Source: Calcarisporiella thermophila CBS 279.70
Lineage: Eukaryota > Fungi > Calcarisporiellomycota
Reading direction: 5' to 3'
Length of the DNA stretch: 64,000 bases
Assembly (NCBI RefSeq): GCF_041956535.1
Contig: NW_027192196.1
Location: 675,823-739,822, forward strand
The stretch's first letter is position 1, and each line of letters begins with the position of its first letter. Positions 20,595-27,702 of this stretch are shown here, in pieces. The position numbers and the translations under genes are program-made. A model generated the notes under the pieces. The model was not told where the DNA came from. It searched no databases and saw only the letters and a program-made list of their open reading frames with translations.

Positions 20595-21746
20595 GTTTAC
20601 GAAGCTAGATTGGTAATTGCCCTTTGATTATGAGCATATATCCCGGATATGTAAGGGATTTCCGCTACTAGTGATCCTTAATCACGATTCCTCGCTGGGG
20701 GAGATGTAAGAGTGTGGATGTCTCTCCAGATTTTTCTTGATGGACGAGGGGGAGCACGGAAAATCAAGGGAGAAGAATAAGGAGATGGTAGAGATGGGAA
20801 AGCAGCTCTTTTTGCTCTCTCACTTTCAGTAAATGCACCCCGTGGAGTAAGCTTTGTTCGGCCGCTCAAGGAAAATACGAAAAGTCAAAGTGGGTGTTGA
20901 CTTTCTCTGTTGCACAGTACACAACACAGACGATTTTTTTATTCTTGTGTCTCAAAGTTTTCCAATTTTAATTAATTCACACTTCGCTACTTTGACTGAA
21001 TATTGTGCAATGCGGCCATCTTTACTCTTCTCAGGCAGAGATTGTGAGTCCATTGTGTGGCAGGGGGCAATGAGGGCGGCCCGCAGCTTTCCCCGGTCTT
21101 GCGCTCGCAGAGCCCCCTCCCCCTGCCCATAGGCCCTGACTATCTTTGAAGCTGAGGTTGTGGTCAGCTTTTCACCTAATATTATGCTACAAGGTCAATG
21201 CGCATTCCACAAAATTCGGTGGTAGCTATTGGGAGGGGTTTTGGAAACTTGACGGTTTCAATCTTCTCCGATTTGCAGCGGTGGCCACCTTACTCAGCCG
21301 AATCCCCCTCAATGCAAATGGGATTGATGGCAAGACGACCAGGGCTATAGCATACGGCCCCTCTCTCTCACAAACAAATTGGCTCCAGCCGGCTGAGTCA
21401 CCTGAGCAAAAGAGAAACATTCGAGTGGTGAGCCGGGGGCCTTTCTGACACTCGCGTCGTCAGAGTCTGGCCAGCTAGAAACATTTCCACCGCCAGGAAC
21501 GAGGGCGGCAGGGGAGCTCGGGAGGCCAAATCATCCTCCACGATGCCAATCCACGGCACCAAGTCCTCTGGATATTTCTCCGGGCCGGATCCAAGCCTTG
21601 CCCCCTTATTGGGATGGAGATTTGTCCATGACTGGAATGGGGGGCTTATTCAAATTTAATAAAACACGCGTGAGTCGCGTCACTTCCAGCTCCAAACCTG
21701 CACCGCATCAAAACCCTCAAGCTCTAACTACTAGCCGCGGAACAAA

Positions 21747-23934
21747 ATGGACGACAATCCCTTCCAATCAACCCCTTCCAGCACCCCCTCCCGTCAAATT
21801 CGGGTGAACAACATCCTGAGCCCCACGAGCACCCCTTTTATCAACCGTCTGAATGATGCCGAGGTGCGAAGATGCCTACGCGATGCGTACCGGATGATAA
21901 AGGAGAAGGATAGAGGTGCATCGCAATGCCCCCATAGTTAGAAATGCAGCTGGATTGATATGTATTCTGAAATTTCTAGATTTAATTCTTGCCGCCGAAA
22001 TTGGCCAAAGCTTACTCGAGAAGAACGATGCGCTGGCAATGGAATGCGAGCGCTTACATCGCCAATTTGCCGCCCATGCCCAGCAGCAGTCCCAACATCC
22101 TCCGGAGCCAGCTGCAGAGGAAAGCTCGGACACTTCTACAAAACGCTGTGAAGACGAACGACACGATGTTCTTGCAGCACTCGCAGACGACCTTGAACGC
22201 GCCAATGCCGATCTCCGTAAGGAACTCGAGCAGGCAAATAGGCGCGCAGATGAGGCCAGCAAGCAGGGCGAACGCCGAATTAAAAAACTTGCTGGTGAAT
22301 TTGATCAAATTAAAGCTCAACTCGACAAGCAATTCCGAATCAACGAAGAACTAGAGGAACAAAAGCAGCGACTAGCGCGCGAAAAGGCGGCGCTCGTGCG
22401 GGAACGTGCGGAAATGGCAAAAGGGGAAGTTGAGGGCGAAAAACTGCAAAGTCGTGTGTACGAGTTGGAAGAGCTGATTGAGACTCTGACGGTAGGGCGC
22501 ACTGAAGCGGAGGAGCGAATGGAATCCCTGTCGGAGGAAGTGGCTATCTTGCAAGAGAAATGTGTCGAGTACCAAGAACAGCTCGAGGATCTCGAGCATT
22601 TGAAGGATACGTGTGAGCAACAGAGTGTGCAGATCGCTGAATTGAATGCTTCGCTGGAAGAGTCTCGCGAAACCATCCACGCACTGAATGCACGGTTGTC
22701 GATGCTCGAGCCAGAGAGTGAAAACGGATCGAATAATGATGGCGTGACCCTTTTTAGTGAGGTGGAGGATAGAAGGGTGGAGCTGGAAAATAAGAACAAG
22801 CATTTAAGCCAGGCCCACGCTGGGCTGCTAAAAGCCCACTCGCTCTCTGTGCATCAGCAAGAACGAATGCGTAACCATATATCTCGGCTTACACAGCTTG
22901 CAAGTTCGAAATCCAATGAGGCTCGATTACGACGGCTGGAGCAAGCACTGGGTCAAACACAGAGCGAGAACCAACTACTCCAGGCAAAACTCACGCAAAT
23001 GCAGAGAAGCGCTGCCTCCTCTGTCGAGTATATAAAGTTGGACGACCCCGAGTCCAAGGACGATCTCATTGAGTCTTTGCAGATGCGCGTGGAACAACTG
23101 GCGGCTGACGGGACACGTTTGAGGAAGGAGCTTCAAACAGCACACATGCTTAAACTGGGAGAGGCAGAGAAGGTGAGGGAAGCTCAGGCGGCATTGCATT
23201 CACGCGAAATAGAAATAGAACAGCTGAAGGCCGCAAACGCGCAGATACGGTTCGAATTGGACGAGATGCACTTGAAAGTACAAATGATAATGGAGAAAGC
23301 AAACGCGGAGGAAGCGGATAGTGATGAAGACGCTGACAAACGGGAAGAGGGAGCAAAGGAGAAGGATATAAGGAGAGCTCCAATGGGTACTCAATCGAAA
23401 TCAAACCAGCTATCCTCGACAGACGGGACGAAGGAGAGACCAAAGAGTTATGGAGAGCAAAGGGGCAGTGTATCAAAAGGGGGTAGAGAACGAACTCCAC
23501 AAACTCAAATCAGAGACGGCCTAAACAGAGCCAAATGGGATACCGATAGACCCGCTGAAGAACGTCTTGCAGATGACAATGACACAGAAAGGAGTATATC
23601 GGTTGAAGAGGAGGGGCTGGATGCTGATGTGGACGATATATCTTCCCAGTGTGAGAGCACTCGGAGCGAGGGCTATGATTCTTACGATTTGCCAGTGCAA
23701 GAAGGCTCAACCTCAGACTTTTCATCCAACTCTCCGGAGAGTGCGCGCGCACTCGGCAGTCCACAACCAAAAAAACTGGGTGGAAGTCCTCATCCTCGTA
23801 AGCTAGGCATCCGAAGCAATGGGCCTCCCTTGCGCAACCCTCCTCCAACCAAGGTAGCGTTTGATTCCCATAAGCCAAAGCAACTATATGTTACACGGCA
23901 GAATGTGCAGGCCAACGAATGCAACCAGCAATGA
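21747..23934 (+). CDS. SPDL1: Spindly (kinetochore dynein-dynactin adaptor) orthologue, 2 exons
   Basis: Intron 21916-21979. CC1 box LILAAEIGQSLLEKN; Spindly box GVTLFSEVEDRR; long coiled coil; C-terminus LYVTRQNVQANECNQQ* resembles the recalled human end LYVSSKSTPETQCPQQ. Confidence 0.82.
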
Positions 23935-25054: not shown

Positions 25055-27702
25055 ATGTTTAACAGCCGTCGTCGAGAACAGTAAGTGCATATTCTTACCA
25101 ATCTTCTATGGACCGTTAGGAAAAATGAATCGCTTCGAATAGTAGCACGCAGAGACAGCTAGATTACGCACGCCATATGGCTGAGCTACAATGCTCCCAA
25201 TCCCTTCCTCAACCTCATCACACTGCCATTACTTTAACCTCTGCCCATTCTTCTCGTTCTGCTGAGAAAGAATCCACGGCAAATGAAAGGGAGTATCCAA
25301 CCGGATGGGAGGGGGTCGCCAACAAAGCCCTCCGCAAAATTTACAAGTCAGACGTATACCTCCAGTTCAAATCGCAAGTGCTCGACAAAATAACCATCAA
25401 AGCTGACATCATCGACACAGCTATCCCCCGCTCTGTGCGCGGATACTTGTCTGTATTCTGGGAATTAGAAAGGATCGAAGAGAGAACTCTGGCTCGTATG
25501 CGGGACGTAAAAAGCTACCCCGAGCTACTTCACACGGCCTTTGTCCGGAGAGGAACGGACATGTCGGCAGAGGAGCGTGCATTTTTAATGCATAGAATCC
25601 CAAAGGTGAGAGAAGCGTTCGCACGCTATATTGGCGTCCCGGTGGAAGAAGTACATGAAGAGGACGTCCCAATTGTTGCGCTTGCTGGCAGGTGAGCAGT
25701 CGCGAATAGCATAGTGGCATCTATTTGCTTTACTTATGTTTGTTTAGTGGTGGCGGCTATCGAGCAATGATAGCAACAGGAGCTACAGTCAGGGCAATGA
25801 AGCAAACAGGAGCTTTTGATTGCTTATCGTATTTTGCCGGTAAGCATTGCATCGGAAATGCTGATGAGGGGTCACTAAGAACAGTTTTATTGAATTTCAG
25901 GTGTGAGCGGCTCGACTTGGACTGTGATGCAATTTTACTCTGTCGCCCATTGTGATCCAGAAATGCTTTGTCACCTGCACAGAGAACATCTCAATCTGCA
26001 CCCTGCTTCTCCGAGCACCCTTTTTGATGTACTAGCGTCAGACACCTCGGCTACTCAAATGATTTTTGGTGGGCTCAGGATTAAGCAAGAAGCCCAGCTT
26101 CCCGTTCGTATTGTCGACCTCTTCGGATCCATTATAGCTAGCCGACTTTTGTTGGATAATTGCAAACGCATCCGGCCCGAGCACTGGCGCTTGTCGAATC
26201 AGAGGCGATGGGTTGACAATGGGTCCCAGCCTATGCCAATCTACTCAGCGGTACGGCATGAGCGGCCATGGAAAAATTACGCAGCTGAAAGCGACCCGTT
26301 CGATGACCGGTTGTCAGTGGAAAATGAAGCCACGGATGCATGGTACCAATGGGTACGGACTCATGGCTATCAATTTTCAACTGGTTTGCCTCTGATCTAT
26401 TTCACTTTACTGTAGTTTGAATTCTCTCCTTACTGGGTAGGCAATGACGAACTCCAAGGTGATTAGTGTTTCTACGTCTTCCTACTCTCCTCACTTTCTG
26501 GGCAATTAACCTTTTCCCCTTGTGAAGTCTGGGTTCCAACATGGGGGTTCGGCCGCCATTTCGTCAACGGCAGAAGCGTGAATTTTCTCCCCGAGCAAGA
26601 CCTAGGCCTGATGAACGCGTAAATCAGAAAGAATTGGTAGCGAAGATGAGGGTTGGTTGTCACTCATACGTTTTTTTTTTATCTATAGCATGTGGGGTGG
26701 AGCGTTAGCCGCACCCATTTCGATGTATCTCTACCAGTTACAGCGGGGCTTACCTAAGGGTTTTCTCAGAAATCTTATGGAGAAGATCGTGAAGGAGGTA
26801 GCTTAACTTTTTAGCGATAGAGTAATTGGCTCTAAACAACGCCAACCCCGACACCTATCTAGATTCCTTCCAATGTGTCCGCCATCCATCCTATACAAGC
26901 GCCTACAAATCCTAACTTTTTCTACAAAGCGGTGGAATCGCCAACGAATAAAAGCGCTTACTCTACTCCAAAGCTAAAGCTGATGGATGCCGGTAAGCAT
27001 TTTGATTTGAGCCTGATCATTCCGTCTATGTCATTCCCAAAATCCACTCTAGGATTTGATAACAATCTTCCACTCTATTCCTTCGTGAACCCCAATCGTC
27101 CTGTGGATTTGGTCATCGCCGTTGACTCATCGAGCGACGTGGATCAAGACTTCATGGTGCGATATTCAGAGTTTGCTAGACGGTATTTATCCCTTCAGTG
27201 TTCTTGAGACTTATAGGATTAAGTTCATTGTTCCATTAACTGGACGGTCATGTTTATTTTCCATAGCAAAGGGATCCGGTGGACGAAAATTCACCCAGTT
27301 TCTTCCCCTTCTCCTCCGCTGCCTCGCCGCAACAAAAACGTTCCTCTAACTGCTGAAGAAATTGTGATGCTCTACGGCGAAAGATATTGTGAAGTTTACG
27401 AATCGCAGCCAACATTCCAGCCGGGGTCACATATGCCTAGGGTGGGAGAAGTTCCGCAAGCAACTAACAAAACCCGTATCTGTTATTTTGCTCTTTATCC
27501 AAATGCTGTCGATCCAGCTTTTGATCCTTGTACTGCGGATTTTGCCGGCTTCTCGAACCTTGTTTATACTCGTGAGCAGGTCGATCAAATGTATAGGTGC
27601 GCGGAGGCGAATTATAGGGCGGGAGAAGCCATAGTCAAGGAGCAGCTTCGGCAAATATGGTTGCAAAAAAGGGAGGAGAGATTGCGGAGAACACAGTCTT
27701 AG
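25055..27702 (+). CDS. Cytosolic phospholipase A2 / lysophospholipase (PLA2_B family)
   Basis: ALAG(S)GGGYRAM, FAGVSGSTW nucleophile elbow, PMPIYSAVRHERPW, WYQWFEFSPY, LMDAGFDNNLP. No signal peptide. Confidence 0.88.

What the first reader, a model, noticed from the sequence alone, without database searches (positions are those of the whole stretch)
21747..23934. Fungal Spindly orthologue with all three hallmarks, implying an RZZ-Spindly-dynein kinetochore corona in a fungus
Seen in sequence: CC1 box LILAAEIGQSLLEKN (about 21981-22025), Spindly box TLFSEVEDRR (about 22747-22776), a downstream coil ..IRFELDEMHLK, and the end LYVTRQNVQANECNQQ*. Established knowledge (recalled): human SPDL1 has AAQYG, GNSLFAEVEDRR, ..LRAKLDELKLK and ends in the farnesylated CPQQ needed for RZZ binding. 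Budding and fission yeast lack Spindly, Rod and Zwilch. Inference: this fungus keeps an animal-like farnesyl-dependent corona and dynein-stripping route for silencing the spindle checkpoint. Comparative surveys may already list Spindly in some early-diverging fungi, but I know of no functional study. An automated pipeline would probably call this only a coiled-coil protein.
Basis: partly seen in the sequence, partly recalled or inferred. Interest (0 to 1): 0.85.

Follow-up and report, generated by a model that had tools for sequence, protein, structure and literature searches.

The report
Fungal Spindly, a kinetochore dynein adaptor
This gene is the fungal version of Spindly, the protein that links the dynein motor to chromosomes during cell division in animals; Spindly was already known from other early-branching fungi, and this mould carries it together with all its known partner genes.

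Summary
Observation confirmed; orthology supported; novelty low. The gene (two exons, 707 aa, VTP21DRAFT_10008 of Calcarisporiella thermophila, Mucoromycota) has the CC1 box, Spindly motif and CNQQ end as reported. A profile of holozoan Spindly sequences finds only this gene in the genome (E 1e-48). The half after the Spindly motif matches animal Spindly (60-77 bits) but not BICDR, TRAK or HAP1 (below 0). The genome also encodes Rod, Zwilch, two ZW10s, a CENP-E-like kinesin ending CNNQ, dynein LIC and dynactin p25. Fungal Spindly with its CAAX motif was published in 2015 (PMC4436830), curated in five fungi in 2017 (PMC5579357; one is a direct hit here), and a possible corona in such species was raised in 2023 (PMC10630089). 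Modest additions: the module in Mucoromycota, a broken or displaced HBS1 motif, paired MCB-like promoter motifs on Spindly, Rod, Zwilch and one ZW10 paralogue only, and a fungal sister family without CAAX. Corona expansion and checkpoint silencing by dynein stripping are inferred, not shown; Zwilch keeps E422 but not D426. The scan noted Zwilch earlier elsewhere in this genome.

The parts
21666..21680 (.). Pair of MCB-like CGCG-core motifs (ACGCGT and TCGCGT), 81 and 72 bases before the ATG
   Evidence: Sequence. Pairs also lie within 150 bases of the inferred ATG of Rod, Zwilch and one ZW10; 13 of 1216 background tiles have a pair. ACGCGT alone is not enriched in the window (7 vs 6.2 expected).
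21747..21915 (+). Exon 1: N-terminal extension with S/T-P sites, then the start of the first helix
   Evidence: PxxTP and LRxAxRxLREKD in the fungal consensus
21916..21979 (+). Intron, 64 bases, GT-AG, phase 1
   Evidence: Removing it reproduces NCBI record P0001 exactly; no RNA run was listed to confirm it
21980..23934 (+). Exon 2, residues 57-707 and stop
21982..22026 (+). CC1 box (AAEIG, residues 61-65), the dynein LIC-binding motif of adaptors
   Evidence: A61, A62, G65 invariant in 21 homologues; AAxxG definition in PMC9481740
22087..22146 (+). Pro/Ser/Glu-rich linker (about residues 93-112) that breaks the coil where animal Spindly has HBS1 (CC2 box)
   Evidence: No Qxx[HY] conserved at the animal spacing in 19 fungal sequences; non-helical, pLDDT under 50 in the model. 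BLASTP aligns EDERHDV just after it with animal EQDKYSL, so HBS1 may be displaced rather than lost.
22747..22776 (+). Spindly motif TLFSEVEDRR (residues 313-322), the dynactin pointed-end site
   Evidence: L314, E317, V318, R322 invariant; aligned to animal GNSLFxEVEDRR
22783..23280 (+). Spindly-specific CC2/CC3 coiled coils (residues 325-490)
   Evidence: Fungal profile of this part scores animal Spindly 60-77 bits, BICDR/TRAK/HAP1 below 0; helical in the model
23281..23883 (+). Unconserved, low-complexity tail
   Evidence: No consensus across homologues; human residues 440-605 are likewise unstructured
23884..23934 (+). C-terminal LYV...ECNQQ: predicted Rod-binding strand and atypical CAAX box (Cys704)
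   Evidence: C704, Q706, Q707 nearly invariant; same register as human LYV...QCPQQ; farnesylation itself not tested

Best explanation
The gene encodes the Spindly orthologue of C. thermophila, a dimeric coiled-coil dynein-dynactin adaptor for kinetochores. Shown here: the anatomy, the reciprocal orthology, and the presence of the partner genes. Inferred from animal work: Cys704 is farnesylated and inserts into the pocket of the Rod beta-propeller, so the protein loads on RZZ at unattached kinetochores; CC2 folds back on the CC1 box until it is opened there; the CC1 box then binds dynein LIC and the Spindly motif binds the dynactin pointed end, giving lateral microtubule capture and poleward removal of RZZ-Spindly. 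Whether RZZ-Spindly polymerises into an expanded corona, and whether stripping is needed to silence the checkpoint, is less certain (about even odds). Identity as Spindly about 0.95; the kinetochore adaptor role about 0.8.
For: Reciprocal best match: fungal-only profile retrieves annotated Spindly of Patiria, Nematostella and Glandiceps over the whole 468 positions at 117-130 bits, against 58 bits or less for BICDR1 and TRAK; a holozoan Spindly profile finds only this gene in the genome, E 1.1e-48; hhalign 99.9%, E 7e-37. Direct hit P0010 is the sequence curated as Spindly in PMC5579357. Partners: Rod with KNTC1_N, ARM1-3 and Rod_C exons in order; its pocket positions stay hydrophobic (L100V, L108I, L110F, L119V, L120F, F124V); Zwilch, three exons colinear with the Pfam model, best PDB match human Zwilch; two ZW10; kinesin-7 ending CNNQ; DLIC and p25. 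Shared paired promoter motifs on Spindly, Rod, Zwilch and one ZW10.
Against: No expression, localisation or binding data (no RNA run listed). HBS1 is absent at the animal spacing. Zwilch has Ser at D426, one of two acidic residues whose double mutation blocks human fibre formation. Rod has Phe at 110, a change that was part of a pocket-blocking triple mutant; that alignment is weak (E 0.046). The human Rod-contact residues I589, S594 and T600 are not kept. MPS1 sites in Rod could not be aligned. The N-terminal half does not form one clade with holozoan Spindly (p-AU 0.012).
Confidence: 0.8

Rival explanations
1. True Spindly on RZZ, but without an expanded corona or dynein stripping: a compact RZZ-Spindly unit serves as a Mad1 or CENP-E platform, or recruits dynein weakly, while Dam1 and PP1 handle attachment and silencing as in yeasts.
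For: Broken HBS1 region; Zwilch D426 not kept; Dam1 present; coronas have hardly been examined outside vertebrates (PMC10630089). If mitosis is closed, cytoplasmic dynein may not reach kinetochores (own knowledge; the mode of mitosis in this species was not looked up).
Against: CC1 box and Spindly motif are the most conserved parts across fungi, which implies selection on dynein-dynactin binding; E422 of Zwilch and both CAAX boxes are kept.
Confidence: 0.12
2. A membrane-cargo dynein adaptor of the BICDR/TRAK kind, with the prenyl group used as a membrane anchor in interphase hyphal transport.
For: Best PDB matches of the fungal profile are BICDR1 (1e-14) and TRAK2 (1e-8); PF28219 also tags BICDR1; the N-terminal half is closer to a fungal family with a C-terminal membrane helix than to animal Spindly.
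Against: No full-length Spindly was among the PDB matches listed; the C-terminal half matches Spindly only; CxQQ is the Spindly-type motif; Rod and Zwilch co-occur; promoter motifs are shared with RZZ genes.
Confidence: 0.05
3. Generic coiled-coil protein with chance motif matches, or animal contamination.
For: Coiled coils give spurious matches (myosins); the local Pfam copy gave nothing significant.
Against: Reversed-sequence controls score below 7 bits; the gene sits on a 1.27-Mb fungal contig and its closest relatives are Endogonales and Basidiobolus.
Confidence: 0.01

Closest known systems
Fungal Spindly orthologues curated in van Hooff et al. 2017 (PMC5579357, Dataset EV1: Spizellomyces, Batrachochytrium, Allomyces, Catenaria, Coemansia); B. 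dendrobatidis CAAX in Holland et al. 2015 (PMC4436830)
   Same: Same family: S. punctatus SPPG_00843 is a direct hit (37% identity, E 1e-56) and shares all motifs, the linker after the CC1 box and the CNQQ end.
   Different: That set held no Mucoromycota Spindly; Mortierella and Phycomyces are absent from its Spindly, Rod and Zwilch files. This gene and its Endogonales relatives extend the range. I could not read the 2023 presence/absence figure, which may already cover this.
Human Spindly (SPDL1) and the RZZ-Spindly corona (PMC9481740, PMC9058546, PMC10630089, PMC10711656)
   Same: CC1 box, Spindly motif, CC2/CC3, disordered tail, LYV...CxQQ end; all RZZ subunits and a CAAX-bearing CENP-E in the genome.
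   Different: About 40 extra N-terminal residues with S/T-P sites; coil broken at HBS1; Zwilch D426 is Ser; two ZW10 paralogues; Dam1 present, Ska1 not convincingly found; no functional data.
BICDR1/2, TRAK1/2, HAP1 (CC1-box adaptors)
   Same: Homologous N-terminal half with CC1 box (29-48 bits); BICDR also has a Spindly-like motif at the same spacing.
   Different: No similarity after the Spindly motif, no CAAX box.

Membership tests
Spindly (SPDL1 orthologues) | Reciprocal best match with animal Spindly over the conserved core | tested here: met
Spindly (SPDL1 orthologues) | CC1 box AAxxG | tested here: met
   AAEIG 61-65, invariant
Spindly (SPDL1 orthologues) | HBS1 / CC2 box Qxx[HY] about 35 residues after the CC1 box | tested here: inconclusive
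   Absent at that spacing in fungi, including curated ones; a degenerate copy may follow a 20-residue insertion
Spindly (SPDL1 orthologues) | Spindly motif, about 235 residues after the CC1 box | tested here: met
   LFSEV at +252; animals +233 to +236
Spindly (SPDL1 orthologues) | Spindly-specific CC2/CC3 after the motif | tested here: met
   60-77 bits to animal Spindly, below 0 to BICDR/TRAK/HAP1
Spindly (SPDL1 orthologues) | C-terminal Cys at -4 (atypical CAAX) | tested here: met
   CNQQ; 100 of 114 family members
Spindly (SPDL1 orthologues) | One exclusive clade with holozoan Spindly in the dynein-binding half | tested here: inconclusive
   Tree splits fungi from holozoa (98/99); AU p 0.012 against the joint clade, but on coiled-coil sequence with a fungus-wide linker, no root and few BICDR rows
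Spindly (SPDL1 orthologues) | Farnesylation, RZZ binding, kinetochore localisation, dynein activation | not testable with these tools
   Needs experiments
RZZ-Spindly corona module | Rod, Zwilch and ZW10 genes in the same genome | tested here: met
   (exon by exon)
RZZ-Spindly corona module | Hydrophobic farnesyl pocket in the Rod propeller | tested here: inconclusive
   Six aligned pocket positions hydrophobic, but Phe at 110 and a weak alignment; the rest of the pocket not aligned
RZZ-Spindly corona module | Zwilch E422 and D426 (fibre formation) | tested here: inconclusive
   E422 kept, D426 is Ser
RZZ-Spindly corona module | CENP-E with CAAX | tested here: met
   Kinesin-7-like gene, last exon ends CNNQ by my splice reading; a 43-residue motor piece matches CENP-E and KIFC3 equally
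RZZ-Spindly corona module | MPS1 sites T13/S15 of Rod | tested here: inconclusive
   First exon gave no alignment to human Rod
RZZ-Spindly corona module | Expanded fibrous corona and dynein stripping in cells | not testable with these tools
   Needs imaging
BICDR / TRAK / HAP1 adaptors | Family-specific C-terminal cargo regions | tested here: not met
   C-terminal half scores below 0 against them; HAP1_N only E 0.019 over the CC1 box

The most novel reading that the evidence does not exclude
A culturable Mucoromycota mould runs a corona-like RZZ-Spindly-CENP-E system beside a Dam1 complex, with a ZW10 paralogue set aside for mitosis (the other keeps the Dsl1-type trafficking job) and a Spindly that engages dynein without a canonical HBS1; and the ancestral Spindly-like adaptor duplicated separately in fungi (giving a tail-anchored membrane adaptor family) and in holozoa (giving BICDR/TRAK).
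Probability: 0.25. Interest if true: 0.6.

Novelty: new member of a known kind. Interest (0 to 1): 0.27.

Why it matters
The gene itself is an expected member of a published family. Its value is as a test system: whether a fibrous corona exists outside animals is named as open in PMC10630089, and this genome holds every known ingredient. Retention in Calcarisporiellales and Endogonales, if Mucoromycota is sister to Dikarya (own knowledge), would mean several separate losses of the module in fungi rather than one early loss.

Tried and rejected
Local Pfam copy: no significant family. PDB phmmer with exon 2: nothing; the profile search gave BICDR1/TRAK2 first, rejected as an orthology test because no full-length Spindly was listed. 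PF28219 alone is not diagnostic: it also tags BICDR1. Atlas structure matches were all TM under 0.5 by the query; I ran no fold search because long helices carry little signal (pTM 0.27). Atlas look-up of the Zwilch exon was uninformative. Zw10_N found nothing and rang in no control. The Ska1 hit is below cut-off and looks like generic coil. The look-up of encoding contigs had no record. No RNA run was listed. A single ACGCGT is not above chance. Neighbours (a methyltransferase, a PLA2_B gene) are unrelated. Farnesyltransferase, dynein heavy chain, Mad1 and Mps1 were not searched.

Full report
Observation. The gene has exon 1 at 21747-21915, a 64-base GT-AG intron and exon 2 at 21980-23934; the 707-aa product equals NCBI record VTP21DRAFT_10008 of Calcarisporiella thermophila (P0001). 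Homologues come from Endogone, Jimgerdemannia, Basidiobolus, Dimargaritales, Coemansia, chytrids and blastoclads. CC1 box, Spindly motif and the terminal CxQQ are the conserved points.

Is it Spindly? CC1 box and Spindly motif are shared by several adaptors (PMC9481740), so they do not decide it; the fungal profile hits BICDR1 and TRAK2 in the PDB and Pfam PF28219 'Spindly' tags BICDR1 too. Four tests decide it. (a) A profile made only of fungal and closely similar unnamed sequences, run over 1.84 billion proteins, retrieves annotated Spindly of Patiria, Nematostella and Glandiceps over the full core at E 1e-32 to 9e-29, plus Monosiga and Chromosphaera proteins. (b) A profile of three annotated and two unnamed Spindly-type sequences finds one locus in the genome, this one, E 1.1e-48. 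(c) The part after the Spindly motif (325-490) scores animal Spindly 60-77 bits and BICDR, TRAK and HAP1 below zero; reversed controls stay under 7 bits. (d) Cys at -4 goes with that part: 100 of 114 against 2 of 78. Profile-profile comparison gives 99.9%, E 7e-37 over 433 columns.

Partners in the genome (G000), searched exon by exon. Rod: C26 about 195-204.5 kb, minus, with KNTC1_N, ARM 1-3 and Rod_C in order. Zwilch: C4 about 1.038-1.040 Mb, minus; three exons match model positions 85-117, 197-332 and 391-423, and human Zwilch is the best PDB match. ZW10: two diverged genes, C13 from 460235 and C15 from 368952. A kinesin-7-like gene, C3 61024-67638, ends CNNQ in a short last exon by my splice reading; the motor piece tested ties CENP-E with KIFC3, so the class rests also on the N-terminal motor and long coil. 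Dynein LIC and dynactin p25 are present, as is Dam1.

Residues that matter in the human system (PMC9058546). Rod pocket positions 100, 108, 110, 119, 120 and 124 align to V, I, F, V, F, V: all hydrophobic, but Phe110 was part of a blocking mutant and the alignment is weak. Zwilch keeps E422 and has Ser at D426. The Spindly tail keeps LYV in register with human 590-592 but not I589, S594 or T600. HBS1 (Qxx[HY], bioRxiv 279398) is clear in animals at +34 to +37 and missing there in the fungal sequences, which carry a variable low-complexity linker; the model shows helix 37-92, a low-confidence break, helix 113-298, a second break before the Spindly motif, then three helices to 499. BLASTP puts EDERHDV after the linker against animal EQDKYSL, so displacement is possible; this is unresolved.

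Promoters. Spindly, Rod, Zwilch and the C13 ZW10 each have two [AT]CGCG[AT] motifs within 150 bases of the inferred ATG; the kinesin-7 gene has two at about -190 and -133; the C15 ZW10 has none and carries a Dsl1_C match. Only 13 of 1216 background tiles hold a pair. Caveats: I chose the motif after seeing the Spindly promoter and an earlier scan note, the background is not promoter-matched, and the start codons are inferred. It is independent, modest support for a shared cell-cycle programme, and a lead that the ZW10 copies divide mitotic and trafficking work.

Tree. On the N-terminal half, fungal Spindly groups with a fungal sister family that lacks the C-terminal half and CAAX, against holozoan Spindly with BICDR and TRAK (98/99); a joint Spindly clade is rejected at p-AU 0.012 (P0025 and P0173 left out of the first tree for want of a motif match; no root). 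Either the adaptors duplicated separately in fungi and holozoa, or the shared linker and coil composition pull the fungal rows together. It does not touch the C-terminal evidence.

Mechanism. Shown: anatomy, orthology, partner genes. Inferred from animal studies: farnesyl-Cys into the Rod pocket, auto-inhibition through CC2, LIC binding by the CC1 box, pointed-end binding by the Spindly motif, dynein loading at kinetochores. Less secure: corona expansion and silencing by stripping.

What is known. Holland et al. [quoted passage not shown] 2017 define the Rod-Zwilch-Spindly module and list Spindly for five fungi; their S. punctatus entry reads the same as my hit P0010, no yeast is in the file, and Coemansia has both Spindly and Dam1. 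Wu et al. 2023 report RZZ-S in fungi and animals, its co-occurrence with the CENP-E CAAX, and raise the possibility of coronas in such species. Three searches found no functional study in a fungus. New relative to the 2017 set is the Mucoromycota occurrence; the 2023 figure could not be read.

Handling. Window and genome genes were searched exon by exon by reference. I joined the two Spindly exons once, inside a script, only to check the frame against the database record; that joined sequence was sent to no search. Full-length analyses used the database's own record P0001 by id.

Verdict. Real, correctly identified, already known in kind. Interest 0.27.

Noticed in passing
G000:C13 from 460235 (+) (L035) and G000:C15 from 368952 (-) (L036): Two strongly diverged ZW10 genes (18% identity in the middle domain). 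The C13 copy has paired MCB-like motifs upstream and again in intron 1; the C15 copy has none upstream and matches Dsl1_C. Possible split into mitotic (RZZ) and trafficking (NRZ) copies.
   Followed up: partly
L012:856-2601 (-), G000:C12 about 295.7-297.5 kb; relatives P0029, P0030, P0128, P0143: A fungal sister family of Spindly: N-terminal half with CC1 box and a Spindly-like motif, no CC2/CC3, no CAAX, and in Mucorales, Umbelopsis and Entrophospora a hydrophobic helix about 10 residues from the C-terminus. Looks like an undescribed tail-anchored dynein adaptor; the copy in this genome shows no clear AAxxG in the ORF read.
   Followed up: partly
L033:6459-6639 (G000:C3, gene 61024-67638, +): CENP-E-like kinesin whose CAAX (CNNQ) sits in a short last exon behind a 76-base intron; reading through the intron would hide it.
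   Followed up: partly
L033:250 and 549; L005:1194; L035:1509-1534: ACGCGT-type motifs inside short introns of the CENP-E-like, Rod and C13 ZW10 genes.
   Followed up: no
window:21747-21776 and L005:1436-1465 (-): Spindly and Rod begin alike (MDDNPFQS, MEEEDPFQS); probably chance, unexplained.
   Followed up: no
G000:C6:953591-953755 (L019) and C6:365170-365493 (L018): Clear Dam1; only a sub-threshold, coil-like Ska1 match.
   Followed up: partly
window:19534-20594 (-) and 25177-27207 (+): Neighbours: a methyltransferase gene divergent from Spindly and a PLA2_B-family gene downstream; no link to the finding.
   Followed up: partly
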